Shown piece by piece: positions 986-49,773 of a DNA stretch of 64,000 bases. How positions within the stretch are numbered: the first letter of the stretch is position 1; every line of letters begins with the position of its first letter. A program made the position numbers and the translations under genes. The DNA comes from Chrysemys picta bellii (taxonomy: Eukaryota), in contig NC_088801.1 in NCBI RefSeq assembly GCF_011386835.1, positions 62,930,001 through 62,994,000 on the forward strand, given 5' to 3'. Below the pieces are notes generated by a model that saw only the letters and a list, made by a program, of their open reading frames with translations, did not search any database and had not been told where the DNA came from.

Positions 986-1019
986 CATTAAGACCCTTCC
1001 AGACAAAAGGCGTCTTGAT

Positions 1020-3844
1020 TCAGTAGAGATCAGTGGCACGTCTCAAAGAGCCGACTCTGCCACTCATAGAGCCCCACTCGCTGAATCTCCGGTACTGCCC
1101 TGGCCTCAGGAGGTACTGGCGGCCTCTGTAATTCGGCAATTCGTAAAGGATCCAGTACCCGTCCAGCACAGAACAAGAGAGCATCTCGGGGGAGCGTAGC
1201 TGGTCCATGACTTGTGGAGAGTCCTCGGTTAACTCTACCATGTTGCCTCTGTGATCCTCCTTCTCATAGATCTTTATCCTGTAGGTGCCCCTGTGCTGTG
1301 ACAGAAAATGAGACAGGGTAATAGTGACTGCAGCAGACTGGCTGCCTGTGATCCTGGGCCCTGAGTCAGCCCTGTGCACTGCTCCAGTGATGCAAAGGGC
1401 GCTTAATGCTGCCTCTGGTCTCCAGAGGAGGGGAATCCTTGAATGCTGCAAAGGCAGCACATCCACCCATTTGACTGAGACCTACGTGAGCCAGCATGTC
1501 TGGGGTGGGGAGGGAGCCCAGCCAAGCACAAGAGGGGACAAGGCTGCAATGTACAATGCTGGCCAGTCCTCAGCCAGCACAATGATCCCATAGGCCAGGA
1601 GTTCTCAATCTTTTTCTTTCTGAGGCCCTGGTGACGGGGCATGCTTGCCCCACACCAATACTGCAAAGGTTAAATCTACTCTTTGGGCTGAGGAGGCCAC
1701 CACCCTTGGCCCTGCTGGGTGTGTTCCATCTGTAGACCAGGTATAAAAGGGAGCAGCCCAGCTCATTTGGGGCTGACTGCTGAGGAGGGAGGACGCCCGC
1801 TGGAGGCTCCAGCCCTGGAACTGCTGAGGCCTCAGAAGGAAGAAGCCGGAGATGCTGAGACACAGGCAAATGCCCAAGTTCCTGCATATGCCCAAGGAGT
1901 GACAAAGCTGCTGAGAGCCGCACAGGCTGAGGAGCCTATGGACTTCGGAGATGCCAGGACGACTCCACCAGGGACAGGATAGGAAATAGGTCAGGGAGAC
2001 TAGGCAGTGTACCAAGTGTTGTCAGTGTGTTTTGGTTGGATTCCTCACTGACTCAGTGGTGAGCATACTTGCCACTGTCAGGGCCCTGAGCTGGGACCTG
2101 GAGCAGGGAGGGCACGAGTCCCCCTTCCCGGTTTCCACCCCCCTCAGGTGGCAGCCCACTCCCTTGACCAGCCTACTGAAGAGGGCCATTATATTGACTC
2201 TGGCCATTTGGCCACACAGTCCTGCTGATTTGGGCCACAAGGACACGCAGTCCTGACGGACGGCAGCCATATTGATTTTTACCCTTAGGCAAAGCTGTCC
2301 CAAGATAAAGGGTGATTGTATAGATTCAACTGCGGGGCCATAATTATCCTCACTCCTTCCCAAGAAGGGATGGGTCACACTTGCCCCACGACAGGGTCCC
2401 CTAACATGCTATAAAAACTCCACGGACCTCTGTGCCATAACAACAGTTTTTCTGCATATAAAAGCCGGGGCTGCCATTAGAGGGTAGCAAGCAGGGCAAT
2501 TACCCAAGGCCCCGTGCCACAGGGGGCCTTCGAAGCTCAGCTGCTCTGGCTTACGCTTCAGGCACGGGTGGTGGGGCTCAGGGCACTGGGGCTTCGGCTT
2601 TCCGTCCTGGGCCCCGGTGCGTCAAATGCTGGCCTTGCATTGAGATTCTATGAAACCCATTCGTGGCCCACCAGGGGGCCTCAGATCCCTAGTTGAGAAC
2701 TGCTGGCAGAGGCTACACTAAGTTCTGATAGGGGGTGTTTCAGGCTTCAGCAGCCCCAAAACCAAGGAAACAGAAAAGTGACTTTGTTCTAAAGAGTCTC
2801 AGAAAATGTTGAGCCCAATTCTCCCCTCACACGGGTGTAACTCTCTGGGCTTCAAGGAGTTACTCCTTATTTTACACCAGTGTGCGGGGAGTGGGCCCAG
2901 TGTATCTCCAAATCCCCAGAAGTTACGGATCCATTTTCCCTTCTTAACTCGAAGTATGTTGTTGTTCACTGTCCATATTCCTAACCACAGGACAGCTGCA
3001 CCAACGCCCAGAACAGGCAGCCGTAGAGGAAGTTTCCTATCCTATCCCTGCAATGTCCCCCCAGCCATCCTGGAGGGATGACCACTAGGAGGAAGAAAGC
3101 AGTTCTCGTTTTCAGTCCTTGGGAGCTCAGTTGAAAATGATCAAGCAAGAGCCTTATGACGGTGGCTTGGGCAACGTTGCCATTTTTAAAAGCAAAATCC
3201 AACTCACAGGTGGTATCATCCGGCAGGACTTAATGGAGGTGCTGAAACCCTCAGACTGCATGTCGGGATAATCCCCCCGTTTCAGAAAGAACTGCTGTCC
3301 CTGGAAGTTGGGACGTTCATAGAGCATGAAGCAGCCACTTTCCACGCGGACGGAGTTACAGCGGCTGAGCTGACTTTGAAAATCCGGCCGGTCGCTGCTG
3401 CACTCAACGGAGCGGCCCTGGAAGTTTCTGTCCTCGAAAAGAGTGATCTAGTGCGAGAAACAAATGGCAGAGTTTGCAGTAACATCCTATACAGTGTGAC
3501 TGCGTCCTGGTATTCTAATTTCTCTCCATCCAGCACACTAAGCCTGAAGTGTCTGGACCTTGCATTTTACCCACAGTGATGATAAACTGATATACTCCTG
3601 TGACTTCAGTGGAACTGATCCTCATTTACACAAGTGTAAGCGAAAGCAGAATTGGGCTGTGAGAGATTAATATACAGGGACTAATAGAAGCAGTAGGTCC
3701 CCTAGCTCTGCATTCTTGATTCTCCTCTTCTACTGATATAGGCCAGGAGTAACTCTGTTGTAAATGGGAGGAGAATCAGGTCCCTGGCTTCAGGCTGACC
3801 TAGCGTACAACCCAGTCCAGACAGGTTTCTCTTACCTTTTCCAT
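1020..3844 (-). CDS. CRYG: Gamma-crystallin, copy 1 (174 aa); join(3836..3844, 3208..3447, 1020..1295)
   Basis: Exon 1 ATGGAAAAG|GTAAG (MEK). Exon 2 is 240 bp, tag|ATC...CCACCT|[86 protein letters not shown]. Exon 3 cag|[20 protein letters not shown]...[47 protein letters not shown]. Classic 3-exon, phase-0 gamma-crystallin layout with Greek-key motifs. AATAAA at 980..985. Orthology within the family is not resolvable by eye. Confidence 0.95.
1629..2439 (+). mobile_element. Old solo-LTR-like element in intron 2, antisense to the gene
   Basis: TGTGA...(G/T)CACA ends (perfect TGTGA/TCACA in copy 4) and internal GGTATAAAAGG at 1742..1748. Homologues at 20867..21705, 33018..33883 and 47551..48362; absent in copy 2. 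No clear TSD. Confidence 0.55.
3717..3778. repeat. Short hairpin MITE-like remnant in intron 1
   Basis: Perfect 11-bp inverted ends TGATTCTCCTC / GAGGAGAATCA; a homologue lies in intron 1 of every copy, with a degenerate right arm in copies 3 and 4. Confidence 0.55.
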
Positions 3845-3894
3845 CGTAGCTGGATTCAGGCTGCAAGCCTTAGTACTCCAGCTGGGCAACTGCC

Positions 3895-3941
3895 TTTTTA
3901 TACCTCATAACCAGTGCTAAGTGTGCACACGTTAACAAAAG
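3895..3941 (-). promoter_or_regulatory. Copy 1 proximal promoter: TATA (3895..3902), MARE-like TGC-N7-GCA (3915..3927), SOX site CTTTTGTT (3934..3941)
   Basis: Minus strand reads CTTTTGTTaacgtgTGCACACTTAGCActggttatgaggTATAAAAAgg, about 50 nt upstream of the ATG. Same SOX-MARE-TATA order as the characterised mouse gammaF-crystallin promoter. Confidence 0.75.
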
Positions 3942-4917: not shown

Positions 4918-4949
<32 letters not shown>

Positions 4950-6491: not shown

Positions 6492-6494
6492 TCT

Positions 6495-8200: not shown

Positions 8201-8244
8201 GTGTGCACGTAAGTGTCTGATTTTTAACCATGTCTGTTGGCTAA

Positions 8245-8897: not shown

Positions 8898-9211
8898 ACA
8901 GTTTTGCTGACATGCAGTTTTTTTTAAAGATTAGATGCTGGGTGCTAGCGGGGCTAATTGGGAAGTAGCACAGGATTGTGGGAAATGCCCACCAGACAGC
9001 TGGGCTGCAGGGAGCCTCATAACCTGGAGGGGGTGACAGTAGTGCCCTAGCCAGAGGGCTGAGTCATGAAATCATGAATGGGAGGTCCCAGGACTTGCCC
9101 TTGAGCTGGGTGTAGCTGTTTGGGTGGGTGGACTGGGCCAGGGGTGCTTTTCTCTTCCTGCCTCCCACAGTCCTCTGCTGGGCTGCTGTTGGTGGCTCCT
9201 ACAGTTAATCC

Positions 9212-12200
9212 AGGAGATGGGGGAAAGCCGACTGCTGCAGAGGAGCATGTGGCTCGGACAGAGATTTCTCGTAGGGGAGAGTCTAATGATAGAGAATCTC
9301 CAGGTTATAGTCAGGAGCAGAGGATGGAAGAGGATAAAGTAAGGGCCAGATCAGATGATAAACAGTCACATAAAAAAGAATCTGATACATCAGAAAAGGG
9401 CAGACAAATAAACAGTGACAAGTTTTTAAAGTGCTTGTACACAAATGCTAGAAGTCTAAATAATAAGATGGGTGAACTAGAGTGCCTTGTGATAAAGGAG
9501 GATATTGATATAATAGGCATCACAGAAACCTGGTGGACTGAGAGCAATCAATGGGACACAATCATTCCGGGGTACAAAATATATCGGAAGGACAGAACAG
9601 GTCGTGCAGGGGGGGAGTGGCACTATATGTGAAAGAAAATGTACAATCAAATGAAGTAAAAATCTTAAGCAAATCCACATGTTCCATAGAATCTCTGTGG
9701 ATAGAAATTTCATGCTCTAATAAGAATATAACATTAGGGATCTATTATCGACCACCTGACCAGGACAGTGATAGTGATGATGAAATGCTAAGGGAAATTA
9801 GAGAGGCTATCAAAATTAAGAACTCAATAATAGAGGGGGATTTCAATTATCCCCATATTGACTGGGAACATTTCACTTCAGGACGAAATGCAGAGATAAA
9901 ATGTCTCGATACTTTAAATGACTGCTTCATGGAGCAGCTGGTACGGGAACCCACAAGGGGAGAGGCAACTCTAGATTTAGTCCTGAGTGGAGCGCAGGAG
10001 CTGTTCCAAGAGGTAACTATAGCAGGACCGCTTGGAAATAGTGACCATAATACAATAGCGTTCAACATCCCTGTGGTGGGAAGACCATCTCAACAGCCCA
10101 ACACTGTGGCATTTAATTTCAAAAGGGGGAACTATGCAAAAATGAGGGGGTTAGTTAAACAGAAGTTAAAAGGTATAGTGACTAAAGTGTAATTCCTGCA
10201 AGCTGCATGGGCGCTTTTTAAAGACACCATAATAGAGGCCCAAATTCAGTGTATACCCCAAATTAAGAAACACAGTAAAAGAACTAAAAACCATGTAAAA
10301 GAAGCAGTGAGAGATAAAAAGACTTCCTTTAAAAAGTGGAAGTCAAATCCTAGTGAGGCAAATAGAAAGGAGCATAAACACTGCCAAATTAAGTGCAAGA
10401 ATATAATAAGAAAAGCCAAAGAGGAGTTTGAAGAACGGCTAGCCAAAAACTCCAAAGGTAATAACAAAATGTTTTTTAAGTACATCAGAAGCAGGAAGCA
10501 AGCTAAACAACCAGTGGGGCCCCTTGATGATCGAGATACAAAAGGAGCGCTTAAAGACGATAAAGTCATTGCGGAGAAACTAAATGGATTCTTTGCTTCA
10601 GTCTTCACGGCTGAGGATGTTAGGGAGATTCCCAAACATGAGCTGGCTTTTGTAGGTGACAAATCTGAGGAACTGTCATGGATTGAAGTGTCACGAGAGG
10701 AGGTTTTGGAATTAATTGATAAACTTAACATTAACAAGTCACCGGGACCAGATGGCATTCACCCAACAGTTCTGAAAGAACTCAAATGTGAAGTTGCGGA
10801 ACTGTTAACTAAAGTTTATAACCTGTCCTTTAAATCGGCTTCTGTACCCAATGACTGGAAGTTAGCTAATGTAATGCCAATATTTAAAAAGGGCTCTAGA
10901 GGTGATCCCGACAATTACAGACCGGTAAGTCTAATGTCTGTACCGGGCAAATTAGTCGAAACAATAGTTAAGAATAAAATTGTCCGACAAATAGAAAAAC
11001 ATAAACTGTTGAGCAATAGTCAACATGGTTTCTGTAAAGGGAAATTGTGTCTTACTAATCTATTAAAATTCTTTGAAGGGGTCAACAAACATGTGGACAA
11101 GGGGGATCCAGTGGACATAGTGTACTTAGATTTCCAGAAAGCCTTTGACAAGGTCCCTCACCAAAGGCTCTTATGTAAATTAAGCTGCCATGGGATAAAA
11201 GAGAAGGTCCTTTCATGGATTGAGAACTGGTTAAAAGACAGGGAACAAAGGGTAGGAATAAATGGTAAATTCTCAGAATGGAGAGGGGTAACTAGTGGTG
11301 TTCCCCAAAGGTCAGTCCTTGGACTGATCGTATTCAACTTATTCATAAATGATCTGGAGAAAGGGGTAAACAGTGAGGTGGCAAAGTTTGCAGATGATAC
11401 TAAACTGCTAAAGATAGTTAAATCCAAAGCAGACTGTGAAGAACTTCAAAAAGATCTCACAAAACTAAGTGATTGGGCAACAAAATGGCAAATGAAATTT
11501 AATGTGGATAAATGTAAAGTAATGCACATCGGAAAAAATAACCCCAATTATACATACAATATGATGGGGCTAATTTAGCTACAACAAGTCAGGAAAAAGA
11601 TCTTGGAGTCATCGTGGATAGTTCTCTGAAAATGTCCACGCAGTGTGCAGAGGCGGTCAAAAAAGCAAACAGGATGTTAGGAATCATTAAAAAGGGGATA
11701 GAGAATAAGACTGAGAATATATTATTGCCCTTATATAAATCGATGGTACGCCCTCATCTCGAATACTGCGTACAGATGTGGTCTCCTCATCTCAAAAAAG
11801 ATATACTGGCACTAGAAAAGGTTCAGAAAAGGGCAACTAAAATGATTAAGGGTTTGGAACGGGTCCCATATGAGGAGAGATTAAAGAGGCTAGGACTGTT
11901 CAGCTTGGAAAAGAGGAGACTAAGGGGGGATATGATAGAGGTATATAAAATCATGAGTGATGTGGAGAAAGTGGATAAGGAAAAGTTATTTACTTATTCC
12001 CATAATACAAGAACTAGGGGTCATCAAATGAAATTAATAGGCAGCAGGTTTAAAACAAATAAAAGGAAGTTCTTCTTCACGCAGCGCACAGTCAACTTGT
12101 GGAACTCCTTACCTGAGAAGGTTGTGAAGGCTACGACTATAACAGAGTTTAAAAGAGAACTGGATAAATTCATGGTGGTTAAGTCCATTAATGGCTATTA

Positions 12201-12401
12201 GCCAGGACGGCTAAGGAATGGTGTCCCTAGCCTCTGTCTGTCAGAGGATGGAGATGGATGGCAGGAGAGAGATCACTTGATCATTGCCTGTTAGGTTCAC
12301 TCCCTCTGGGGCACCTGGCATTGGCCACTGTCGGTAGACGGGATACTGGGCTAGATGGACTTTTGGTCTGACCCGGTACGGCCTTTCTTATGTTCTTATG
12401 T
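9212..12401 (+). mobile_element. 5'-truncated CR1 LINE with nearly the whole ORF2 (APE endonuclease + RT), disrupted
   Basis: LKCLYTNARSL, GITETWW, YYRPP, GDFNYP, SDHN (endonuclease); KSPGPDGIH, YLDFQKAFDKV, GVPQ, FADDTKL (RT); ORF pieces 9120..9632, 9551..10192, 10307..11578, 11614..12201. 3' tail (TTCTTATG)x2. Inserted into gttaatcc|cacactg, which is intact at about 19358..19372. Confidence 0.95.
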
Positions 12402-31575: not shown

Positions 31576-32398
31576 GTTCCATCTGGGTTATATTTTTAAG
31601 CTTTGATTTACACCCCTATGGGACAGAAACCCCAGCTTTTCTTACACACTGGAAGTGCCAGTGTAATCGGATGATTCCAGGAGCTGGGGCCCTCAACCCA
31701 GACCTGTACTGCCTATACCTAGATAATCCTGCCCTGTCCTGGATTGGTGCTCAGGTAACTCCGGCCCAAGGCTTGGCCCCTGGCTGGGGGGAGAGCTGTG
31801 AATGGTGCTGCCTCTCGGTTTAGAGAGGGATGTGGCTGATTCTTGCCATCACCTGGGTGCCCAGCTCTGCCTGCTTCTTGCCTGGTGGCTGAGGGGGCTC
31901 TGGCTGCTGCTCCCTGGTGATGCTCCCAGGGCCATCTGGTGAAGAAGCAAGGGTGGGAGCTCAGCCCAGAGCCACTCTAGTGCTAGCTCCAAATCTCTGT
32001 CCGGGGTGGGCTGAGGATTATGGTCTAAAGTACATCTCTGCAATTGTCATCCTCTCTATGGCCCAAGTCCTGTATGTTTTGGTTTCTTGGTCAGCCTCCT
32101 GCAATGCATTCTGGGTAAGGGCAGCACAGCCATGAAGGTGCCCCTGTACTCCCTTGTGTGGCTGCCTAGGCTGGAGCCCTGGGTTTGGCCACATTGTGCT
32201 GGAAGTAGCTATGCAATGCTGGGGGAGGGCAGGAAAAGATGAGGCACAACTTTTGGTTCAGAAGATGATACCGTAGCCTAAGAACATAGGACAAGCTTCA
32301 ATGTTCCCCTTAGTACACTTACAACAGCACGCTGAGAGCACAATGGTTGCTAAAGCATTTTATTCACTGAGACCCTTCCAGGAGAAATGCGTCTTGAT

Positions 32399-34955
32399 TC
32401 AGTAGAGATCAGTGGCTCGTCTCAAAGAGCCGACCTTGCCACTCATAGAGCCCCACTCGCTGAATCTCCGGTACTGCCCTGGCCTCAGCAGGTATTGGCG
32501 GCCTCTGTAATTCGGCAATTCATAAAGGATCCAGTACCCGTCCAGCACAGAACAAGAGAGCATCTCGGGGGAGCGTAGCTGGTCCATGACTTGCGGAGAG
32601 TCCTCGGTTAACTCTACCATGTTGCCTCTGTGATCCTCCTTCTCATAGATCTTTATCCTGTAGGTGCCCCTGTGCTGTGACAGAAAATGAGACAGGGTAA
32701 TAGTGACTGCAGCAGGCTGGCTGCCTGTGATCCTGGGCCCTGAGTCAGCCCTGTGCACTGCTCCAGTGATGCAAAGGACACTTATAGCTGCCTCTGGTCC
32801 CCAGAGGAGGGGAATCCTTGAATGCTGCAAAGGCAGCACCTCCACCCATTTGAGTCGGACCTCTGCCAGCCGTGACTCCCACCCTTGGTGCAGGGAGCAT
32901 GTCTGCCCAACCAGACACAAGAGGGGACAGGGCTGCAGTGTACAACGCTGGCCAATCCTCAGCCGGCACAGTGCTCCCATAGGCCTGGGGTTCTCAATCT
33001 TTCTTTTTCTGAGGCCCTGTGATGGAGCCTGCTTGCCCTGCACTGGTACCGCAAGGGTTAACTCTACTCTTTGGGCTGAGGAGGCCACGCACCCTCGGCC
33101 CTGCTGGGCATGCTCCAGCTAGAGACCAGGTATAAAAGGGAGCAGCCCAGCTCATTCAGGGCTGAATGCCAAGGAGGGAGGACGCCCGCTGCAGTCTCCA
33201 GCCCGGCAAGTGCTGAGGCCCCAGAAGGCAGAAGCCAGAGACGCCGAGACACAGGACAATGCCCAAGCTCCTGCAGGCGCCCAAGGAGCGACAAAGCTGC
33301 TGAGAGCCGCACAGGCTGAGGAGCCTACGGACTTTGGAGATGACAGGACGACTCCACCAGGGACAGGATAGGAAGTAGCTCAGGGGGACTAGGCATTGTA
33401 CTGAGTGGTGTCCGTGTGTTTTGGGTGGATTCCCCACTGACTCAGTGGTCACTGTGAGGGCCCTGAGCTGGGATCTGGTGGAGCAGGGAGAGCACTGGTC
33501 AGGCTAATCAGCCCTACTGAAGAGGGCCATTATACTGACTCTGGGTATTGGGCCATGCAGCCATGGGCTGTTCCCTTTTATACCTGACCTCCAGCTGGAG
33601 CATGCCCAGCAGGGCCGAGGGTGCGTGGCCTCCTCAGCCCAAAACAGTCATTGTGGCACAGGGGGCCTGCTGACTCGGGCCACAAGGACACACAGCCCTG
33701 AGAGGGGGCAGCAATATTGACATTTATCCGTAGGTCAAGCTATCCCAAAACAAGGGGTGATTGTATAGATTCAGCCACAATGCCATAATTACCCTCACCC
33801 CATCCCAAGAAGGGACAGGGCGTGCTTGCCCCACAAAAGGCCCCCTAACATGCTGTAAAAACTCCACGGCCCCCTGTGTCACAATGACTGTTTTTCTGCA
33901 TATAAAAGCCGGGGTTGCCATTAGAGGGTAAGGTAAGGTAAGAGGCAAGCAGGGCAATTATCCAGGGCCCATTCCACAGGGGGCCCTGCGAAGCTAAGTT
34001 GCTCTGGCTTCAGCTTCAGGCAGCTGTAGAGGAAGCTTTCCTATCCTATCCCTGCAATGTCCCCCCAGCCATCCTGGAGGGATGACCACTAGGAGGAAGA
34101 AAGCAGTTCTCGTTTTCAGTCCTTGGGAGCTCAGTTGAAAATGATCAAGCAAGAGCCTTATGACGGTGGCTTGGGCAACGTTGCCATTTTTAAAAGCAAA
34201 ATCCAACTCACAGGTGGTATCATCCGGCAGGACTTAATGGAGGTGCTGAAACCCTCAGACTGCATGTCGGGATAATCCCCCCGTTTCAGAAAGAACTGCT
34301 GTCCCTGGAAGTTGGGACGTTCATAGAGCATGAAGCAGCCACTTTCCACGCGGACGGAGTTACAGCGGCTGAGCTGACTTTGAAAATCCGGCCGGTCGCT
34401 GCTGCACTCAACGGAGCGGCCCTGGAAGTTTCTGTCCTCGAAAAGAGTGATCTAGTGCGAGAAACAAATGGCAGAGTTTGCAGGAACATCCTATACAGTG
34501 TGACTGCGTCCTGGCATTCCAATTTCTCTCCGTTCAGCACACTAAGCCTGGGAGGGGGACGTGACTGGGGCCACCGACGTTTGCGCGCCCCCTCCGGTCG
34601 CCATCCCGTCCGCACACCCGCACCGAGAGCTCCCCATCCGGAGTATTTTGCATTTTACTGACTCTTGTGATAAATTGATATACCCCTGTGACTTCAGTGG
34701 AATTGATCCTCATTTACACAAGTGTAAGCAAAAGCAGAATTGGGCTGTGAGAGATTAATATACAGGGACTAGTAGAGGCAGTAGGACCCCTAGCTCTGCA
34801 TTCTTGATTCTCCTCTCCTATTGGTATAGGCCAGGAGTAACTCCTTTGAAATCAACAGACTAACTCAGATGTAAATGAGAGGAGACTCAGGTCCCTGGCT
34901 TCAGACTGACATACCAAACAATCCAGTCCAGACAGGTTTCTCTTACCTTTTCCAT
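32399..34955 (-). CDS. CRYG: Gamma-crystallin, copy 4 (174 aa); join(34947..34955, 34212..34451, 32399..32674)
   Basis: MEK | [11 protein letters not shown]...CRMIPP | HRGTY...VLDGYW...[13 protein letters not shown]. Intact splice sites. Confidence 0.95.
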
Positions 34956-35005
34956 CGTAGCTGGATTCAGGCTGCAAGCCATAGTACTCCAGCTGGGTAA
35001 CTGCC

Positions 35006-35052
35006 TTTTTATACCTCACAACCAGTGCTAAGTGTGCACACGTTAACAAAAG
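35006..35052 (-). promoter_or_regulatory. Copy 4 proximal promoter: TATA 35006..35013, MARE-like 35026..35038, SOX site
   Basis: Same motifs and spacing as copy 1. Confidence 0.75.
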
Positions 35053-36166: not shown

Positions 36167-36169
36167 TAA

Positions 36170-36950: not shown

Positions 36951-38865
36951 TTTGGAATTGTCTGTTTCAAAGCATCACTTCTATAGTCACAACAACCCAT
37001 CAAGGTGACATCTTGACCAGCAAGCCAGTGTGCCAGGTGGCATCATATGCTGCTTTTGAGTCAAGAAGTACAGCCCCGGACATCATGGGGCACTGGGATC
37101 GAGGTTTCCAAGATGACCTCCAGCTCTGCTGCTGCTTCTCCAAATCTAAAAGTATGGAAAAAACAGAGGAGAGCTGCCTCCATACTTATCCAAACAAATG
37201 GTACCTGAGCCTCGTGGGATAGGGCTAATAGCTGTAACAGCAAAGGTTGCTGCTCAGACTGCTGAAATGAAATCAACAGTTTCCATCCGACAGATCACCA
37301 TGACCGAGACCGTGTGCACTGCAAGCTCTAGCCAGATAGACTGGTGAAGCAGAACAGACTTTCTGAAGTGGAAGATGATTTTAAAGAGAACAAATAACAG
37401 GTTATCAAGAACTGTAATGATATCAAGACCAAACTAATTGAGGGAACAGATAAAGGCAAAACTTCTGAATTTGTCTCTAAATTGCTAAATTGTAGGATTT
37501 TCTAGTCACTTTTTATTTTCATATAGACTGGGCATACCGGACCCTTGTCCCCCAGCCAGCTCTCGGCGGTTGGCTTAGAGCGTTTGATTATGAAGCTCCA
37601 CCACTAAGAAGCTTATACTGCAAAAATCGAGAGAGACATGGTTTGGTTATGGGAAGAACCAGCAATTAAAACACTGCTCTCTCAAGATTATGCCGTGATG
37701 TAGTTGGAATGAGGGCAGCTTTTAACCAAGCGAAACAATTGGCTAGGAAGTTTATTAAATACTTGGCTAAACTCTATATTAAGAATGGGGATAGTATTAT
37801 GCAGTTCCCCTCAGGAGGCAGAAAAATACCTCCAAATTCTGCAAACTCCCCTTTGCAAGACAAGACATCTATGGAATGATCAGAGCGTATGGAATTTTGA
37901 TATTGCTCTCTGACATCTGACATGGTTGCTGTAAACAAGTTGAGCGCTTATTGATATGTTAGTTTCTTTTCTCTTTTTTTTCTCTCTCATTGGGGCTGAA
38001 GGGTTAAAACGTTATTAACAATTTACTTCCTATTGCCTTAAATCATGGGGAAGGAGCATGAATGTAAAATCTATCTATCATCATTGCTTTATTAGATGGT
38101 GCTTCCTGATGGACTAAGGTTTATGAAGGTTCTATTGGTAAGAGATGACTACTGTCATTGTAATGTTCAGAGCCCCAGGGGCTGCGAGGATCTCCAAGTT
38201 TTGCCTGATCTGACTGCCCCCTCTGGTTAAAAAACAGTCCAAAACTACACACTTGATAAACAAATTTTTCTTTTTGATGGTAGGGTACTAATGTATATTT
38301 CTCTCTCCACTATCTTTTTCTGTCTTATTTTTATCACTTTATTTAGTCCCTCTTTCTGTCTCCATGCTGGGAGTTTCCTTCCCATGCCGGTAGAGTATGT
38401 ACTAGGTAGCTACTCTCTACCCCTGGATTATATAACTTTGGCTGCTTAGATATTTAAGAGTTGTTTACTGCACAGGAAAATTTTTAATGTCTCATTTATT
38501 CACTAAGGGTATGTCTACACTACGGGATTAATTCGAATTTATATAATTCGAATTTTGGAAACAGATTGTATAAAGTCGAATGTATGCGGCCACACTAAGC
38601 ACATTAATTCGGCGGTGTGCGTCCATGTACTGGGGCTAGCGTCAATTTCCAGAGCGTTGCACTGTGGGTAGCTATCCCATAGCTATCCCATAGTTCCCGC
38701 AGTCTCCTCCGCCCATTGGAATTCTGGGTTGAGATCCCAATGCCTGATGGGGCCAAAAACATTGTCGCGGGTGGTTCTGGGTACATCCTCCCCCCTCTCC
38801 AGGGAAGCAATGGCAAACAACTGTTTCGCGCCTTTTTCCTGGGTGAACAGTGCAGATGCCATACC

Positions 38866-40164
38866 ATGGCAAGCATGGAGCCTACTCAGCTCAAGACATC
38901 AGTCATGAACATTGTAAAGACCTCGCGCGTTATCGTGCAGTTTATGCTGAACCAGAACCTGCAAAACCAGGCGGCGAGGAGTAGGCTACGGCAGTGCGGC
39001 GGCGAGAGTGATGAGGACATGGACATGGAATTCTATGAAACCGCGGGCCCCGGTGCTTTGGAGATCATGCTGTTAATGGGGCAGATTATAGCCGTGGAAC
39101 ACCGATTCTGGGCCCGGGAAACAAGCACAGACCGGTGGGACCTCATAGTGTTGCAGGTGTGGGACGATTCCCAGTGGTTGCGAAACTTTCGCATGCGTAA
39201 GGGCACTTTCATGGAACTTTGTGACTTGCTTTCCCCTGCCCTGAAGCGCCAGAATACCAAGATGAGAGCAGCCCTCACAGTTGAGAAGCGAGTGACGATA
39301 GCCCTGTGGAAGCTTGCAACGCCAGACAGCTACCAGTCAGTCGGGAATCAATTTGGAGTGGGCAAATCTACTGTAGGGGCTGCTGTGATGCAAGTAGCCA
39401 AAGCAATCACTGAGGTGCTGCTACGAAAGGTAGTGACTCTGGGAAATGTGCAGGTCATAGTGGATGGCTTTGCTGCAATGGGATTCCCTAACTGTGGTGG
39501 GGCGATAGACGGAACTCATATCCCTATCTTGGCACCGGAGCACCAGGGTACCCAGTACATAAACCACAAGGGGTACTTTTCAATGGTGCTGCAAGCACTT
39601 GTGGATCACAAGGGACGTTTCACCAACATCAACGTGGGCTGGGCGGGAAGGGTTCATGACGCTCGCGTCTTCAGGAACACTACTCTGTTTAAACGGCTGC
39701 AGCAAGGGACTTACTTCCCGGACCAGAAAATAACCGTTGGGGATGTTGAAATGCCTATAGTTATCCTTGGGGACCCAGCCTACCCCTTAATGCCATGGCT
39801 CATGAAGCCATACACAGGCAGCCTGGACAGGAGTCAGGAGCTTTTCAACTACAGGCTGAGCAAGTGCAGAATGGTGGTAGAATGTGCATTTGGCTGTTTA
39901 AAAGGTCGCTGGCAATCGTTACTGACTCGGTCAGACCTCAGCCAAACCAATATCCCCATTGTTATTGCTGCTTGCTGTGTGCTCCACAATCTCTGTGAGA
40001 GTAAGGGGGAGACCTTTATGGCAGGGTGGGAGGCTGAGGCAAATTGCCTGGCTGCTGATTATGCGCAGCCAGACACCAGGGCGATTAGAAGATCACACCA
40101 GGAAGCGCTGCGCATCAGAGAAGCTTTGAAAACCAGTTTCATGACTGGCCAGGCTACGGTGTGA
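38866..40164 (+). CDS. Harbinger DDE transposase (HARBI1-like), about 432 aa, open frame
   Basis: GAIDGTHIPI, VDHKGRFTNINVGWAGRVHDARVF, LGDPAYPL, FNYRLSKCRMVVECAFG.LKGRW. ATG at 38866 in a good Kozak context, in frame with ORF 38716..40164. Confidence 0.92.
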   Translation: MASMEPTQLKTSVMNIVKTSRVIVQFMLNQNLQNQAARSRLRQCGGESDEDMDMEFYETAGPGALEIMLLMGQIIAVEHRFWARETSTDRWDLIVLQVWDDSQWLRNFRMRKGTFMELCDLLSPALKRQNTKMRAALTVEKRVTIALWKLATPDSYQSVGNQFGVGKSTVGAAVMQVAKAITEVLLRKVVTLGNVQVIVDGFAAMGFPNCGGAIDGTHIPILAPEHQGTQYINHKGYFSMVLQALVDHKGRFTNINVGWAGRVHDARVFRNTTLFKRLQQGTYFPDQKITVGDVEMPIVILGDPAYPLMPWLMKPYTGSLDRSQELFNYRLSKCRMVVECAFGCLKGRWQSLLTRSDLSQTNIPIVIAACCVLHNLCESKGETFMAGWEAEANCLAADYAQPDTRAIRRSHQEALRIREALKTSFMTGQATV

Positions 40165-40599: not shown

Positions 40600-42394
40600 C
40601 TGTTTGATCACGCAGCAGCCCCAGCGTTGCAGCCTGCCACCTCTCATCTCAAGCGGGTGAGGAGGGAGGGTTGTTTGCTTAAAGGGAATGACCTCACGTT
40701 CACTGGCATCTTTCCTGTACTTAGATACTGTGTCCTTCCACTCATTCAAATGAGCTCTTTCATTGCGGGTGCATCCTTTATATCCGAGTACATCTCGTCT
40801 CGCGTCCTCTTTCTCCACCGCCTTATCTGAGATAGCCTTCGGGACGGAGGAAGGAGGCTTGAAAATTTGCAGCTGCTGGAAGGATGGAAAAAAGGAGAGA
40901 AGTTTTTAAAAAGATACATTTTACAGAACAATGCTTATACTCTTTCACAGTGAAAAACACTATTCACATTACATAGCACATGTGATTTCAGTACAAGGTC
41001 GCATTTTCCATCTTAATATTGAGTGCCTGTGGCTTTGGTGTTAGAGATCACAGACGCAGGTCCGGGCAACAGAATTCGGCTTGCATGCGGCCATGGTAAG
41101 CCATTGTCTTTTGGCTTCTGCGCCCTCCTTTCCCACATACCAAGCAAAGCCCGTTGACTGCTGCGGTTTTCCTGTTAACCTTCAGCAGCAGAAAACAAAC
41201 TCCCCCCCCCATCCAATTCTCTGGGATGATCGCTTTATCCCTCCCCCCACCGCGTGGCTGGTATCAGGGAAGATCCCTGCTAGCCAAAGGCGAAAAGCTC
41301 AGCGCCAATTTCCCCCCCCCCCCCCCCCACGCCCTTGGCTAACTGCAGGGAAGGATTTCTTTTCAGCCACAGGCAAATAGCCCAGTAGGAACGACCACCT
41401 CTGTCCCCTTAATTAAATGCCCGTATTTCAACCAGGTTACCATGAGCGATATCACTCTCCTGAGGATTACACAGCGAGATAAAGAACGGATGTTGCTTGA
41501 ATGCCAGCAAACACCGGGACCATATGCTGCCAGGCTTTGTCATGCAATGATACCAGATTATTTGCTACTAGCATGGCGTGGTCAAGTGTCCTACCATGGA
41601 GGACGGAAAAAGGCTGCACTGCCCAGAAACCTTCTGCAAAGGCTTTTGGAGTACCTCCAGGAGAGTTTCATGGAGATGTCCCTGGAAGATTTCCGCTCCA
41701 TCCCCAGACACGTTAACAGACTTTTCCAGTAGCTGCGAATGCATCCCAAGTCCTCAGGGCAAATTAATCATTAAAAACCGCTTGCTTTTAAACCATGTTT
41801 TATATTTTAAAAGGTAAACTCACCTGAGGTCCCTTCCATGGGGTCATGGTCTTGGGTACTGGCTTGGGAGGCTTGGGAGGGTACTTCAGTCAGGCTGAGA
41901 AAAAGATCCTGGCTGTTGGGGAGAACGGAGTGCCGGGTGCTCTCCGCAAGATCATCCTCCTCCTCCTCTTCCCCGTCCGCAGAATCCTCAGGTGTAGCTG
42001 ATGAGATTATCCCCGCCTCGGAATCCACGGTCAGAGGTGGGGTAGTGGTGGCGGCCCCCCCTAGAATTGCATGCAGCTCAGCACAGAAGCGGCATATCTG
42101 CGGCTCTGACCCGGAGCGACCGTTTGCCTCTTTTGTTTTCTGATAGGCTTGTCTGAGCTCCTTGACTTTCACGCGGCACTGCTCTGAGTCCCTATTGTGG
42201 CCTCTCTCCATCATGCCCTTGGAGATTTTTTCAAAAGTTTTGGCATTTTGTCTTTTCGAATGAAGTTCTGCTAGCACTGAATCCTCTCCCGATATAGCGA
42301 TCAGATCCAGTACCTCCCGTACGGTCCATGCTGGTGCTCTTTTTCGATTATCGGCCTGCATGGTTATCTGTGCTGATGAGCTCTCTGTGGTCAC
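40600..42394 (-). pseudogene. Harbinger Myb/SANT-like DNA-binding gene; exon 1 (41824..42394) open, exon 2 (about 40600..40875) frameshifted
   Basis: KRAPAWTVREVLDLI...RGHNRDSEQCRVKVKELRQAY followed by an acidic tract. Donor G|GTGAGT at 41823; polypyrimidine tract and CAG at about 40876. The downstream protein-like text is split between frames (RLSQIRR.RKRTRDEM in 40746..40931; TRNERAHLNEWKD in 40549..40818). Confidence 0.75.
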
Positions 42395-45310: not shown

Positions 45311-46914
45311 TTAGTCAACCATATGACTATGGAATGTACTGGCAACAGGCTCTTGGCGATAATACTGTGTAGCTCTTATTACAAGTACCTTGCTACAATG
45401 CTGGGCTTCTCGCATAGAAAAAAGCTTGCATCGTTGATCTAAGTGCAAATCTCAACTTGGCCTGACCCATGGAGTCCCCATGAAGGGACTGTACTGTAGC
45501 CTGAGGGGTCAGGCTAAAACTGAATGTCTTGTTGCCTTTTCTCTTGTTTTCTGTATTTAATCTTGTCCCTGGTACACCGATAACTGTACGTACAGAAAAC
45601 CTTGTAGTTTTATAGACTAGATTAGTCTTTCTAAAACTGTGAACTCGCACCACTGTCCATGCAGAGAGTCAGGGATCAGGACTCATCTTACTGTATGTAA
45701 CAGTCTTTTCGGATTCAAAGTACATCTGCTGCTGGTAAGGCTGGGGAGCGCTGCATGGCTCCCCCTCCATTAGCCCATCGAAAGCTCTGTATGATTCTCC
45801 ACCAAAAGAGACAGGAACAGAAGTATGGGGCCCTTCCCCCCCCAAGGAGTGGGAGCAAGGGACCTCCAAACTCATGGAGAACAGGGTCCTTTGTCTCTCC
45901 GACCCTAAGATGAAGGGATAGGAGTAGGGTAGCTTCCAGGCCTCGCCCTTGAGCCTGGGTGTATCTGCTTGGGTGGGTGGACTGGGCCAGCAGCATTCTT
46001 CTTCTCCTACCTCCCACAGTCCTCTGCTGGGCTGGTGTTGGTGGCTACTACAGTTAACCTCACACTGAGGTGCATGGGGCTGTTCAGTCCTCTCAATTGT
46101 TTCAGGCTGGCTGCAGACTTGGGCAGACATCTCTGAATTAGTTCCAGCTGGGTTATATTTTCAAGCTCGGATAGAAACCACACCTTTCGTTACACAGTGG
46201 AAGTGCCAGAGTATTCAGATGATTCCAGGAGCTGGGGCCCTGGACCCAGGCCTGTGGTGCCTATGGCTAGTTAACCCTGCCCTGCCCTGGATCGGTGCTC
46301 AGGTAACTTTGGCCCGAGGCACGGTCCCTGGCTGGGGGGAGAGCTGTGACTGGCACTGACTCTCGGCTGGCAGAGGGATGTGGCTGATTCCTGCCATCAG
46401 GTGGGTGCCCAGCTCTGCCTGCTCCATGCCTGGTGGCTGAGGGGGCTCTGGCTGCTGCTCCCTGGTGATGCTCCCAGGGCCATCTGGTGAAGAAGCGAGG
46501 GCGGGAGCTCAGCCCAGAGCCACTCTAGTGCTAGCTCCAAATCTCTGGCCAGCGGTGGGCTGGAAGATTATGATCTAATCTGCAATTGACATCCTCTCTA
46601 TGGCCCGAGTCCTGTATGTTTTGGTTTCTTGGTCAGCCTCCTGCACTGCATTCTGGGTAAGGTGCCCCTGTACTCCCTTGTGTGGCTGCCTAGGCCGGAG
46701 CCATGGGTTTGGCTTTGGAAGTAGCTATGCAATGCTGGGGGAGGGCAGGGAAAAACGAGGGACAACTTTTGGTTCAGAAGATGATACTGTAGCCCAAGAA
46801 CACAGGACAAGCCTCGACGTTCCCCTTAGTACACTTACAACAGCACGTTGAGAGCACAATGGTTGCTAAAGCATTTTATTCACTGAGACCCTTCCAGGCG
46901 AAAGGCGTCTTGAT

Positions 46915-49773
46915 TCAGTAGAGATCAGTGGCTCGTCTCAAGGAGCCGACCTTGCCACTCATAGAGCCCCACTCGCTGAATCTCCGGTACTCCCCTGGCC
47001 TCAGTAGGTACTGGCGGCCTCTGTAATTTGGCAATTCGTAAAAGATCCAGTGCCCATCCAGCACAGAACAAGAGAGCATCTCGGGGGAGCGTAGCTGGTC
47101 CATGACTTGTGGAGAGTCCTCGGTTAACTCTACCATGTTGCCTCTGTGATCCTCCTTCTCATAGATCTTTATCCTGTAGGTGCCCCTGTGCTGTGACAGA
47201 AAATGAGACAGGGTAATAGTGACTGCAGCAGACTGGCTGCCTGTGATCCTGGGCCCTGAGTCAGCCCTGTGCACTGCTCCAGTGATGCAAAGGGCGCTTA
47301 ATGCTGCCTCTGGTCTCCAGAGGAGGAGAATCCCTGAATGCTGCAAAGGCAGCACATCCACCCATTTGAGTCGGAGCTATGCCAGCCGTGACTCCCACCC
47401 TTGGTGCAGGGAGCATGTCTGGGGTGGGGAGGAGGGAGCCCAACCAGACACAAGAGGGGACAGGGCTGCAGTGTACAACGCTGGCCAATCCTCAGCCAGC
47501 ACAGTGCTCCCATAGGCCTGGGGTTCTCAATCTTTCTTTTTCTGAGGCCCTGTGATGGAGCCTGCTTGCCCTGCACTGGTACCGCAAGGGTTAACTCTAC
47601 TCTTTGGGCTGAGGAGGCCACGCACCCTCGGCCCTGCTGGGCATGCTCCAGCTGGAGGTCAGGTATAAAAGGGAGCAGCCCAGCTCATTCAGGGCTGACT
47701 GCCGAGGAGGGAGGACGCCCGCTGCAGGCTCCAGCCCGGCAAGTGCTGAGGCCCCAGAGGAAGAAGCCAGAGACGCCAAGATCCAGGACAATGCCCAAGC
47801 TCCTGCAGGCGCCCAAGGAGCGACGGAGCTGCTGAGAGCCGCACAGGCTAAGGAGCCTACGGACATCGGAGATTCCAGGTCGACTCCACCAGGAACAGAT
47901 TAGGAAGTAGCTCAGGGGGACTAGGCATTGTACTGAGTGGTGTCCGTGTGTTTTGGGTGGATTCCCCGCTGACCCAGTGGCCAGCAAAATTCCCACTGTC
48001 AGGGCCCTGAGCTGGGACCTGGTGGAGCAGGGAGGGCACGGGCTCAGTCTCCTGAGCGGCCTGTCAGACCAAACAGCTCTACTGAAGAGGGCCATTATAT
48101 TGACTCTGGCTATTGGGCCATGCAGTCCCTCTGAACAGGGCAGCCCTGCTGACTCGGGCCACAAGGACACCCAGCCCTGAGAGAGGGCAGCCATATTGAC
48201 TTTTAGCCATAGGCCAAGCTATCCCAAGACAAGGGATGATCGTGTAGACTAAGCTGCAGGGCCATAATTACCCTCACCCCATCCCAAGAAGGGACGGGGC
48301 GTGCTTGCCCCACAAAAGGCCCCCTAACATGCTGTGTAAACTCCACGGCCCCCTGTGCCACAATGACTGTTTTTATGCATATAAAATCCAGGGCTGGCAT
48401 TAGAGGGTAGCAAGCAGGGCAATTACCCAGGGCCCGGTGCCACGGGGGCCCTGCGAAGCTCAGCTACTCAGGCTTCAGCTTCAGGCACATGTGGTGGGGC
48501 TCGGGGCGGTGGGGCTTTGGCTTCTTGCCCTGGGCCCCAGTGAGTCTAATGCTGGCCCTGCTTGGAGGACTCCCTGAAAGTTGCTCAAAGCTCTAGTTGA
48601 GAACTGCTGGCAGAGGCTACACTAAGTTCTGCTGGGGGGCGTTTCAGGCTTCAGAAGCCCCAGAATCAAGGAAGCAGAAAAGTGACTTTGTTCTAAAGAG
48701 TCAAAGGAAATATTGTGCCCAGTTCTCCCCTCACACAGGTATAACTCTCTGGGCTTCAAGGAGTTACTCCTTGTTTTACACCAGTGTGAGAGGACTGGGC
48801 CCAGTGTATCTCCAAATCCCCAGAAGTTACGGAAACATTTTCTCTTTTTAAGTCAAAGTATGTTCTCGGTCACTGTCCATATTCTTAATTACGGGACAGC
48901 TGTACCCACGCCCAGAACAGGCAGTAGCAGGGGAAACTTTCCTATCCTATCCCTGTAATGTCCCCCCAGCCATCCTGGAGGGACGACGACAAGGAGGAAG
49001 AAAACAGTTCTTGTTTTCAGTCCTTGGTAGCTAAGCTGAAAATGATCAAGCAAGTGCCTTACGATGGTGGCTTGGGCAACACTGCCATTTTTTAAAAGCA
49101 AAATTGAACTCACAGGTGGGATCATCCGGCAGGACTTAATGGAGGTGCTGAAACCCTCAGACTGCATGTCGGGATAATCCCCCCGTTTCAGAAAGAACTG
49201 CTGTCCCTGGAAGTTGGGACGTTCATAGAGCATGAAGCAGCCACTTTCCACGCGGACGGAGTTACAACGGCTGAGCTGACTTTGAAAATCCGGCCGGTCG
49301 CTGCTGCACTCAACGGAACGGCCCTGGAAGTTTCTGTCTTCGAAAAGGGTGATCTAGTGCGAGAAACAAACGGCAGAGTTTGCAGTAACATCCTATACAG
49401 TGTGACTGCGTCCTGGCATTCCAATTTCCCTCCATCCAGCACACTAAGCCTGAAGTGTCTGGGCCTTGCATTTTACTCACAGTGATGATAAACTGATATA
49501 CTCCTGTGACTTCAGTGGGATTGATCCTCATTTACACAAGTGTAAGCGAAAGCAGAAATGGGCTGTGAGAGATTAATATACAGGGACTAATTGAGGGAGT
49601 AGGTCCCCTAGCTCTGCATTCTTGATTCTCCTCTCCTATTGGTATAGGCCAGGAGTAACTCCTTTGAAATCAACAGACTAACTCTGATGTAAATGAGAGG
49701 AGAATCAGGTCCCTGTCTTCAGACTGACATACCAAACAATCCAGTCCAGACAGGTTTCTCTTACCTTTCCCAT
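46915..49773 (-). CDS. CRYG: Gamma-crystallin, copy 5 (174 aa); join(49765..49773, 49114..49353, 46915..47190)
   Basis: Exon 1 ATGGGAAAG (MGK) | [11 protein letters not shown]...CRMIPP | HRGTY...VLDGHWIFY...GEYRR...[13 protein letters not shown]. Intact splice sites. Confidence 0.95.

What the first reader, a model, noticed from the sequence alone, without database searches (positions are those of the whole stretch)
1020..49773. Amplified gamma-crystallin type whose N-terminal domain has no Trp and only two Tyr
Seen: exon 2 of all five copies encodes 80 aa with 0 Trp, 2 Tyr and 8 Phe, while exon 3 keeps 2 Trp and 7-8 Tyr. Established: mammalian gammaA-F crystallins have four conserved Trp (42, 68, 130, 156), many Tyr in both domains, and an 81-codon exon 2. 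Here W42 is F (GCF), the W68 region has lost one codon (DMQSEGF), and several canonical Tyr sites are F, V, L or M. Fish gammaM crystallins also lose N-terminal Trp but are Met-rich; this protein has only 8 Met in 174 aa. Inference: a lineage-specific, dosage-amplified crystallin with asymmetric aromatic content, possibly changing UV absorbance, photodamage, refractive increment or unfolding order.
Basis: partly seen in the sequence, partly recalled or inferred. Interest (0 to 1): 0.75.

Follow-up and report, generated by a model that had tools for sequence, protein, structure and literature searches.

The report
Turtle gamma-crystallin array, Trp-free N-domain
Five nearly identical, transcribed eye-lens gamma-crystallin genes sit in tandem in this turtle genome, and their first domain has no tryptophan; the same subtype occurs in all turtles sampled, tuatara and a crocodile, so it is an old reptile gene type rather than a novelty of this genome.

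Summary
Five intact minus-strand genes have three exons and encode 174 aa. In each, exon 2 encodes 80 aa with 0 Trp, 2 Tyr and 8 Phe, and exon 3 keeps 2 Trp and 7-8 Tyr. W42 is Phe and the W68 codon is missing.

The same N-domain is found in both turtle suborders, in tuatara and in Crocodylus porosus. These sequences form one clade (100/100 support, and 100/99 on the C-domain alone). Public databases annotate them as 'gamma-crystallin B-like'.

Tandem arrays also exist in Chelonia and Emydura, and paralogs group by species. Teleost gammaM proteins lost the same two Trp independently.

The genes are constrained and expressed:
- dN/dS is about 0.1-0.25.
- Every copy has a TATA box, GT-AG introns and AATAAA.
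- Contigs spliced exactly at intron 2 occur in four runs, from four studies and four organism labels. The tissue is unknown.

A model of the Chelonia ortholog matches gammaB at TM 0.94.

The predicted consequences are a 6-8-fold lower A280 for the N-domain and a slightly lower refractive increment. I found no paper describing the feature. It is an ordinary lens crystallin array of an undescribed, Trp-poor sauropsid subtype, of modest interest.

The parts
46875..49831 (-). Gene A, from TATA box (49825-49831) to AATAAA (46875-46880); starts MGK
   Evidence: spliced contigs
49765..49773 (-). Gene A exon 1 (ATG GGA AAG, then GT)
49114..49353 (-). Gene A exon 2: 80 codons, N-terminal domain, 0 W / 2 Y / 8 F
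46915..47190 (-). Gene A exon 3: 91 codons plus stop, C-terminal domain, 2 W / 7 Y
   Evidence: joint 47190->49114 in four runs
32359..35013 (-). Gene B, TATA (35007-35013) to AATAAA (32359-32364); starts MEK; intron 1 is 495 nt (84-107 nt longer than in the other copies)
34947..34955 (-). Gene B exon 1
34212..34451 (-). Gene B exon 2 (80 codons; DNA identical to exon 2 of gene E)
32399..32674 (-). Gene B exon 3
20208..23745 (-). Gene C, TATA (23739-23745) to AATAAA (20208-20213); longest intron 2 (2527 nt)
23679..23687 (-). Gene C exon 1
23051..23290 (-). Gene C exon 2 (one extra Cys, R31C)
20248..20523 (-). Gene C exon 3
13270..15010 (-). Gene D, TATA (15004-15010) to AATAAA (13270-13275); shortest intron 2 (707 nt)
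14944..14952 (-). Gene D exon 1
14293..14532 (-). Gene D exon 2
13310..13585 (-). Gene D exon 3
980..3902 (-). Gene E, TATA (3896-3902) to AATAAA (980-985)
3836..3844 (-). Gene E exon 1
3208..3447 (-). Gene E exon 2
1020..1295 (-). Gene E exon 3

Best explanation
This is the turtle gamma-crystallin gene cluster. It holds five tandem, intact, transcribed genes for a monomeric two-domain beta/gamma-crystallin that most likely serves as a structural, refractive protein of lens fibre cells.

The proteins belong to a sauropsid-wide subtype found in turtles, tuatara and crocodile. Once, on the stem of that clade, the N-terminal domain lost both conserved Trp (W42 to F, and the 'Trp corner' W68 deleted) and every Tyr except the two structurally fixed ones (Y45 and the Tyr corner Y62). 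Most aromatic packing positions became Phe.

The fold is kept. The shown or predicted consequences are an N-domain with about one seventh of the usual 280-nm absorbance, and a protein with a slightly lower refractive increment than mammalian, amphibian or fish gammas. Purifying selection has held this state since.

The near-identity of the five copies reflects duplication within the lineage and/or gene conversion. It plausibly raises dosage, as in other gamma clusters. Lens expression and the physical consequences are inferred, not shown.
For: - **Family:** PF00030 in both exons. The best solved relatives are gammaC/B/E/D at E 1e-44 to 1e-41, well ahead of gammaS and the beta-crystallins.
- **Gene structure:** the classical gamma layout of a 9-nt exon 1 and one domain per exon, with GT-AG introns, in all five copies. 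TATA lies at -58, CTTTTGTT at -97 (-90 in D), and AATAAA 35 nt after the stop in all five. TGCTGAC lies at -241 in A-C and -234 in D, and is altered in E.
- **Transcription:** the joint 47190->49114 is exactly intron 2 (GT..AG on the minus strand). It occurs in all four runs laid, from four studies and four organism labels. One 586-nt contig is exon 3 plus exon 2 with 6 mismatches. An exon 1-exon 2 junction appears as a loose end. Exon word depth is 1e4-1e5 against about 10 in the introns of two runs.
- **Constraint:** dN/dS is about 0.1-0.25. The N-domain dN (0.046-0.068) is lower than the C-domain dN (0.072-0.093) against Emydura.
- **Distribution:** the same N-domain occurs in 13 turtle rows, tuatara P0030 and crocodile P0032. 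They form one clade at 100/100, and at 100/99 using the C-domain only.
- **Arrays elsewhere:** Chelonia and Emydura also have arrays. Paralogs cluster by species at 96/95 and 100/100.
- **Locus:** read-through gene models join C2orf80/DUF5563 to a gamma gene in Caretta, Gopherus and fox, which points to the same locus as mammalian CRYGA-F.
- **Fold:** the AF2 model of the Chelonia ortholog has pLDDT 88 and pTM 0.84, and matches human and bovine gammaB at TM 0.93-0.94, rmsd 1.6 A.
- **Predicted optics:** e280 is 2980 for the N-domain against 18,000-26,000 elsewhere; dn/dc is 0.196 against 0.198-0.206.
Against: - The tissue of the RNA runs is coded, and their RNA nature is the tool's guess. Lens expression is therefore not shown, and contig depth is a poor measure of level.
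- No protein-level evidence exists.
- The structure was predicted for the Chelonia ortholog (95-97% identical), not for the window protein.
- Most dn/dc residue constants were recalled from memory. Only Phe and Tyr were checked, in PMC4047532.
- Orthology to the CRYGA-F locus rests on read-through gene models, not on a read locus.
- The sister relations of the clade are weakly supported (89/80 and 81/75).
- Whether turtles also keep four-Trp gammas was not determined.
Confidence: 0.85

Rival explanations
1. Adaptive photochemical tuning. On this view, Trp and Tyr were removed from the less stable N-terminal domain by selection. The benefit would be less UV-B absorption, Trp photo-oxidation (kynurenine-type chromophores, W42-type core damage) and oxidation-driven N-domain unfolding in long-lived, sun-exposed reptiles with non-renewing lens protein, and a lens that stays clear at short wavelengths.
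For: - The losses are selective. Only the two structurally fixed Tyr remain, and positions 6, 42, 50 and 55 became Phe, which keeps packing but removes the indole and phenol groups.
- The state has been held under purifying selection in three reptile orders, and the N-domain is the more conserved half.
- Teleost gammaM lost the same two Trp independently; the tree needs 2 changes.
- My own recollection, not checked here: the human gammaD N-domain unfolds first, and W42 damage triggers aggregation.
Against: - In vitro, W-to-F mutants of human gammaD photoaggregate faster than wild type, and the Trp pairs are argued to be protective (PMC3823069). That runs opposite to this idea unless the reptile core is compensated.
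- No selection test was done on the stem branch.
- Trp absorbs below about 300 nm. My recollection, not checked here, is that the cornea largely removes this band.
- The C-domain keeps both Trp.
Confidence: 0.2
2. Relaxed optical constraint followed by entrenchment. In the soft, accommodating lenses of sauropsids, very high refractive increment matters less. Trp and Tyr in one domain drifted to Phe, Val, Gln or Met on the stem lineage, and the repacked core then became fixed. On this view the asymmetry has no function of its own.
For: - The clade has the lowest predicted dn/dc of the 49 sequences compared, 0.194-0.199.
- The stem branch is long, 0.22.
- Total aromatic count in the N-domain fell from 13-17 to 7-12, rather than being merely exchanged.
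- No bird gamma of this type appears among the hits. This fits my recollection that birds lack gammaA-F.
Against: - Strong purifying selection since then, with the N-domain more conserved than the C-domain.
- The loss is confined to one domain.
- Very high contig depth of the transcripts in two runs argues against a marginal protein.
Confidence: 0.45
3. The copies are decaying remnants, or an assembly artefact, rather than five working genes.
For: - Related gamma genes seem to be missing from birds and from the squamates among the listed hits.
- Near-identical tandem copies are a classical source of assembly error.
Against: - All five reading frames, splice sites, TATA boxes and poly(A) signals are intact, and dN/dS is well below 1.
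- Spliced transcripts exist.
- The copies differ by 4-9% in intron 1 and by 7-23% in the 3' flank. Intron 2 lengths run from 707 to 2527 nt, and different transposons lie between copies. They are distinct loci.
- Arrays are also present in two other turtle assemblies.
Confidence: 0.03

Closest known systems
Mammalian gammaA-F crystallins (e.g. mouse gammaC 2V2U, bovine gammaB 4GCR/1AMM, human gammaD 1HK0)
   Same: - Three-exon gene with a 9-nt exon 1 and one domain per exon.
- About 174 aa, with two PF00030 domains.
- 58-63% identity, and TM 0.92-0.94 to the predicted model.
- Tandem cluster that appears to lie next to C2orf80.
- The C-domain keeps W130, W156 and the Tyr corner.
   Different: - Exon 2 is one codon shorter.
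- W42 is Phe and W68 (the Trp corner) is deleted.
- The N-domain has 2 Tyr instead of 5-10.
- Predicted N-domain e280 is 2980 against 18,000-26,000.
- Predicted dn/dc is slightly lower.
- The five paralogs are 97-99% identical to each other. By my recollection, not tested here, mammalian gammaA-F paralogs are more diverged than that.
Teleost gammaM crystallins (Salmo gammaM2 and Gadus gammaM1-like in my set; zebrafish gammaM7, PDB 2M3C)
   Same: Both N-domain Trp are lost, with Phe at position 42, in Salmo M2 and Gadus M1-like. Both are gamma-type two-domain lens proteins.
   Different: - GammaM puts Met at position 68 rather than deleting it.
- GammaM is Met-rich (14-27 Met against 8) and keeps 6 Tyr in the N-domain.
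- GammaM has a higher predicted dn/dc (0.201-0.202).
- GammaM lies in a separate fish clade, so the Trp loss is convergent.
Engineered Trp-to-Phe mutants of human gammaD (Schafheimer & King 2013, PMC3823069)
   Same: Trp is replaced by Phe in a gamma-crystallin core, which lowers UV absorbance.
   Different: - Those are single-generation laboratory mutants in an unadapted background, and they photoaggregated faster.
- Here the state is natural, combined with a deletion and many Tyr changes, and conserved across reptile orders.
Crocodilian 'gamma-crystallin 2-like / M2-like' (P0077, P0080, P0098)
   Same: Reptile gamma-crystallins of the same length and fold.
   Different: They keep all four Trp and 12-16 Tyr, and group with amphibian gammas rather than with the Trp-poor clade. 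Crocodilians therefore have both kinds.

Membership tests
gamma-crystallin (gammaA-F type) | Two beta/gamma-crystallin (double Greek key) domains and no long terminal extensions | tested here: met
   PF00030 in exon 2 (E 8e-28) and exon 3 (E 3e-29). The protein is 174 aa. The model of the ortholog matches gammaB at TM 0.94.
gamma-crystallin (gammaA-F type) | Three-exon gene: exon 1 encodes Met plus two residues, and each domain lies on one exon | tested here: met
   Exons of 9, 240 and 276 nt with GT-AG introns in all five copies.
gamma-crystallin (gammaA-F type) | Four conserved Trp (42, 68, 130, 156), including a Trp corner in each domain | tested here: not met
   Position 42 is F and 68 is deleted, while 130 and 156 are kept. 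The Trp corner is described as conserved in lens beta/gamma domains in PMC2929430. The feature fails for the N-domain only, so I file these genes as a divergent subtype rather than outside the family.
gamma-crystallin (gammaA-F type) | Tyr corner in motifs 2 and 4 (Y62, Y150) | tested here: met
   Y62 and Y150 are present in all five copies.
gamma-crystallin (gammaA-F type) | Tandem cluster at the locus next to C2orf80 | tested here: inconclusive
   The tandem cluster is shown. The link to C2orf80 comes only from read-through models P0009 and P0012, compared with fox P0087. C2orf80 is not in this window.
gamma-crystallin (gammaA-F type) | Abundant, lens-specific expression | tested here: inconclusive
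   Correctly spliced contigs occur in four runs, with very high exon depth in two of them. The tissues are coded and the RNA status is a guess.
teleost gammaM crystallin | High Met content | tested here: not met
   8 Met in 174 aa, against 14 (Salmo M2) and 27 (Gadus M1-like).
teleost gammaM crystallin | Placement inside the fish gammaM clade | tested here: not met
   The window copies lie in a sauropsid clade (100/100) inside the tetrapod group. Salmo and Gadus gammaM lie in the fish group.
gammaS crystallin | Closest similarity to gammaS; N-terminal arm of about 4-5 residues | tested here: not met
   GammaS chains score E 1e-33 to 1e-28 against 1e-44 to 1e-39 for gammaB-F. The N-terminus is MGK/MEK directly before the first strand.

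The most novel reading that the evidence does not exclude
Sauropsid gamma-crystallins would be a natural experiment, more than 200 million years old, in which the Trp pair and Trp corner thought to be essential and photoprotective were removed by selection from the aggregation-prone N-terminal domain. The result would be a nearly UV-B-silent, oxidation-resistant domain that helps very long-lived reptiles keep clear lenses. If so, the accepted protective role of the conserved Trp pairs depends on context.
Probability: 0.15. Interest if true: 0.6.

Novelty: new variant of a known kind. Interest (0 to 1): 0.35.

Why it matters
The four buried Trp of gamma-crystallins are treated as nearly invariant and as a built-in UV-protection device (PMC3823069, PMC10706789, PMC2929430). 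A whole reptile clade has done without the N-domain pair, and without most N-domain Tyr, under purifying selection and in animals whose lenses must last for decades.

That offers ready-made natural proteins for testing several questions:
- what the Trp pair and Trp corner really contribute to stability;
- what they contribute to photodamage and refractive increment;
- why the two domains are treated differently.

It does not change what the genes are. They are an ordinary lens crystallin cluster, already present in public annotations as 'gamma-crystallin B-like'.

Tried and rejected
- **Spliced protein not searched as a whole.** I did not type the 174-aa product into any tool. I searched by reference instead: exon 2 and exon 3 alone, and two intron-read-through ORFs with the 'region' option. 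The word-based protein search therefore saw each domain separately.
- **P0121.** This Logan protein is 100% identical over part of exon 2 and looked like a transcript. It reads on into intron 2, so it is genomic and says nothing about expression.
- **P0009.** The contig look-up for the Caretta C2orf80-gamma model found nothing on record. Synteny therefore rests on the gene models only.
- **Literature.** Searches combining gamma-crystallin with turtle, reptile, tryptophan, CRYGB, gene loss or proteomics found no paper on reptile gamma-crystallin Trp content. The gammaM7 structure paper (PMC3855534) is not held.
- **Big representative-protein search not used.** I therefore cannot say whether squamates or birds retain this subtype, or whether turtles also have four-Trp gammas. 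Their absence from the 120 listed hits is only suggestive.
- **Upstream ATG.** An in-frame ATG 27 nt upstream gives the 183-aa database models of sea turtles. I rejected it as the start. It sits about where transcription should begin, roughly 31 nt after the TATA box, and it is replaced by TAA in copies D and E.
- **Species.** The exact species was not determined. The closest proteins are Chrysemys and Macrochelys at 98% and sea turtles at 96-97%.
Full report
**What is in the window.** Six-frame ORFs and motif searches show five copies of a gamma-crystallin gene on the minus strand. The gene models are:

| Gene | Exon 1 | Exon 2 | Exon 3 (with stop) |
|---|---|---|---|
| A | 49765-49773 | 49114-49353 | 46915-47190 |
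| B | 34947-34955 | 34212-34451 | 32399-32674 |
| C | 23679-23687 | 23051-23290 | 20248-20523 |
| D | 14944-14952 | 14293-14532 | 13310-13585 |
| E | 3836-3844 | 3208-3447 | 1020-1295 |

Every intron is GT-AG, and every CDS is 525 nt encoding 174 aa. tblastn with the two exon peptides finds exactly these five pairs and nothing else in the window.

Each copy carries these signals:
- a TATA box (TATAAAA) 58 nt before the ATG;
- a CTTTTGTT motif at -97 (-90 in D);
- a TGCTGAC half-MARE at -241 in A-C and -234 in D, altered in E;
- an AATAAA 35 nt after the stop.

That CTTTTGT-type Sox sites and MAREs drive mammalian gamma-crystallin promoters is my recollection, not tested here.

**The observation.** It is correct in every number.
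- The exon 2 products have 80 residues with 0 Trp, 2 Tyr and 8 Phe in all five copies.
- The exon 3 products have 2 Trp and 7-8 Tyr.
- Each protein has 8 Met.

HMMER alignments of exon 2 to mouse gammaC and bovine gammaB put Phe opposite W42 and a one-residue gap opposite W68. A 49-sequence alignment adds further changes:
- Y6 is F, Y16 is V, Y28 is Q, Y50 is F, Y55 is F and Y65 is M.
- The only Tyr kept in the N-domain are Y45, which is invariant in 61 gamma sequences, and the Tyr corner Y62.

**What it is.** Both exons match Pfam PF00030. The best solved relatives are gammaC, B, E, D and F at E 1e-44 to 1e-41, ahead of gammaM7, gammaS and the beta-crystallins.

The word-based protein search places the window in a turtle. 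Hits at 96-98% identity are 'gamma-crystallin B-like' or unnamed proteins of:
- Chrysemys and Macrochelys;
- Chelonia, Natator, Caretta and Eretmochelys;
- Gopherus and Chelonoidis.

More distant hits come from Carettochelys and the side-necked Emydura and Pelusios.

Reading those sequences shows that all of them have the same Trp-free N-domain, one residue shorter. So do a tuatara protein (P0030) and a Crocodylus porosus protein (P0032). Every amphibian, mammalian, lungfish, coelacanth and non-teleost fish gamma in the set keeps four Trp. So do three other crocodilian gammas (P0077, P0080, P0098). Salmo gammaM2 and Gadus gammaM1-like have F at 42 and M at 68.

**Phylogeny.** In a maximum-likelihood tree of 49 proteins, the turtle, tuatara and crocodile Trp-poor sequences form one clade. 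Support is 100/100 and the stem is long, 0.22.
- Turtles are monophyletic within it (100/97), and side-necked and hidden-necked turtles separate as in the species tree.
- The clade also appears at 100/99 when only the C-terminal domain is used, which contains none of the trait columns.
- Its nearest neighbours are an anuran 'M1-1' group (89/80) and then mammalian gammaA-F (81/75). These placements are weak.
- The four-Trp crocodilian gammas group with amphibian gammas instead.
- On the tree, loss of the N-domain Trp needs two changes: one for the sauropsid clade and one for teleost gammaM.

Read-through gene models fuse the C2orf80 family domain (DUF5563) to a gamma gene in Caretta and Gopherus, just as in fox. 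This suggests the turtle array occupies the CRYGA-F locus, but I could not read that flank.

**The array.** Chelonia mydas has three such genes in 22.8 kb and Emydura has three in 21.7 kb, all on one strand. Paralog identity within the window is as follows:

| Region | Identity between copies |
|---|---|
| Exons | 96-100% |
| 300-nt promoter | 94-98% |
| Intron 1 | 91-96% |
| 3' flank | 77-93% |

Intron 2 ranges from 707 to 2527 nt. The copies are therefore distinct loci, not assembly duplicates.

In a CDS tree the five window copies form one group (96/95) and the two Emydura copies another (100/100). That points to concerted evolution, or to repeated duplication within lineages.

Pairwise dN/dS is about 0.1-0.25. 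Against Emydura, the N-domain dN (0.046-0.068) is lower than the C-domain dN (0.072-0.093). The Trp-free domain is therefore the more constrained half.

**Expression.** No run is on record as RNA, but 14 small runs that the tool guesses to be RNA hold 8-32% of the gene's words. That is about the exon share of the gene.

I laid four of them, from four studies and four organism labels, on gene A:
- All four show a joint from 47190 to 49114 that skips 1923 nt with CT..AC ends on the plus strand. This is the exact GT..AG intron 2 on the minus strand.
- One 586-nt contig (X3) is exon 3 joined to exon 2 with six mismatches.
- A loose end beyond 49355 in X1 reads as the reverse complement of CGATGGAAA, which is the exon 1 (MEK)-exon 2 junction.
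- In X1 and X10 exon word depth reaches 5e4-1.5e5, against about 10 or less across most of the introns. Genomic DNA cannot give that ratio.

The genes are therefore transcribed and correctly spliced. I cannot name the tissue, and contig depth is not a proper measure of level.

**Structure and predicted physics.** An AlphaFold2 model was built for the Chelonia ortholog without its database N-terminal extension; that sequence is 95-97% identical to the window proteins.
- The model has mean pLDDT 88 and pTM 0.84.
- It superposes on human gammaB (2JDF) and bovine gammaB (4GCR) at TM 0.93-0.94 and rmsd 1.6 A.
- The block with the deletion (residues 61-70) has pLDDT 74, the same as the equivalent block of the C-domain.

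Using the standard 5500/1490 rule, e280 compares as follows:

| Domain | Predicted e280 (M-1 cm-1) |
|---|---|
| Window N-domain | 2980 |
| N-domains of all non-teleost comparison sequences | 18,450-25,900 |
| Window C-domain | 21,430-22,920 |

Composition-based dn/dc is 0.196 ml/g for the window proteins and 0.194-0.199 for the whole clade. The comparison groups give 0.198-0.203 for mammals, 0.200-0.204 for amphibians and 0.201-0.206 for fish. Most residue constants were recalled from Zhao, Brown & Schuck 2011; only Phe 0.244 and Tyr 0.240 were checked, in PMC4047532.

**How it most likely works.**
- Shown: an intact, constrained, transcribed array of canonical gamma-crystallin genes of a reptile-wide subtype.
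- Inferred: the products are structural refractive proteins of lens fibre cells, and the several near-identical copies add dosage.

The reason for the Trp and Tyr loss is open. I give about 0.45 to relaxed optical constraint in soft sauropsid lenses followed by entrenchment of a repacked core. I give about 0.2 to selection for a photochemically quieter N-domain.

The second idea must contend with one experimental result. W-to-F mutants of human gammaD photoaggregate faster than wild type (PMC3823069).

**Comparison with what is known.** The genes meet the gamma-crystallin definition in fold, gene structure and Tyr corners. They fail the 'four conserved Trp / Trp corner in each domain' feature for the N-domain. 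They are not gammaM (Met-poor, different clade) and not gammaS.

They are present in public annotation under generic names. In the searchable literature I found nothing that describes reptile gamma-crystallins as Trp-free in one domain. The 2024 cysteine-content survey includes only an alligator gamma in its gammaD-like cluster (PMC11118217).

**Verdict.** The feature is real, old and conserved, but it is neither specific to this genome nor unprecedented in kind, given the convergent loss in teleost gammaM. I rate it a new variant of a known kind, with modest interest.

No letters written N occur in the window.

Noticed in passing
window 49795-49803, 34977-34985, 23709-23717 (minus strand), and the equivalent sites in copies D and E: An in-frame ATG lies 27 nt upstream of the MGK/MEK start in copies A-C. 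It gives the 'MACSLNPAT' extension seen in the 183-aa database models of sea turtles. In copies D and E it is replaced by TAA. It sits about where transcription should start (roughly 31 nt after the TATA box), so the 183-aa models are probably over-extended.
   Followed up: partly
window 48350-48640 (inside intron 2 of gene A): A stretch of about 250 nt in intron 2 is covered at depth 60-700 in all four runs. Many contigs run on into unrelated sequence on both sides. It behaves like an abundant, transcribed short interspersed repeat.
   Followed up: no
window 49354-49773, run X6: In one run (organism label C) a 962-nt contig joins exon 3 to exon 2 but then runs unspliced through intron 1 to exon 1. 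This is either a partly processed transcript or a different 5' structure in that species.
   Followed up: no
window 9120-12201 (+): A LINE lies between genes E and D. Its ORFs carry an endonuclease (PF14529/PF03372) and a reverse transcriptase (PF00078) and are broken into at least three frames. It resembles CR1.
   Followed up: partly
window 38716-40164 (+) and 41807-42394 (-): A PIF/Harbinger-type DDE transposase ORF (482 aa, PF13359) and a Myb/SANT-like ORF (195 aa, PF13837) lie between genes B and A. This is the usual two-gene Harbinger pair, and both ORFs are uninterrupted.
   Followed up: partly
window 57075-61295 (+), with repeated flanks near 55.0-56.2 kb and 62.2-63.4 kb: A 1406-aa uninterrupted Gypsy-type pol ORF (RT, RNase H, integrase) sits between what look like long terminal repeats.
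   Followed up: partly
window 29.7-30.7 kb, 51.3-52.0 kb, 5.0-6.2 kb, 7.1-7.6 kb: G+C-rich, strongly G-skewed stretches give long Gly/Trp/Arg-rich or Pro-rich pseudo-ORFs on both strands. They are probably degenerate simple repeats between the gene copies.
   Followed up: no
L001 (Chelonia mydas) 3602-5943: The first of the three Chelonia copies is called as a 216-aa product, longer than its 183-aa neighbours. This is probably another over-extended or mis-joined gene model in the array. P0001 of Natator likewise fuses two tandem copies.
   Followed up: no
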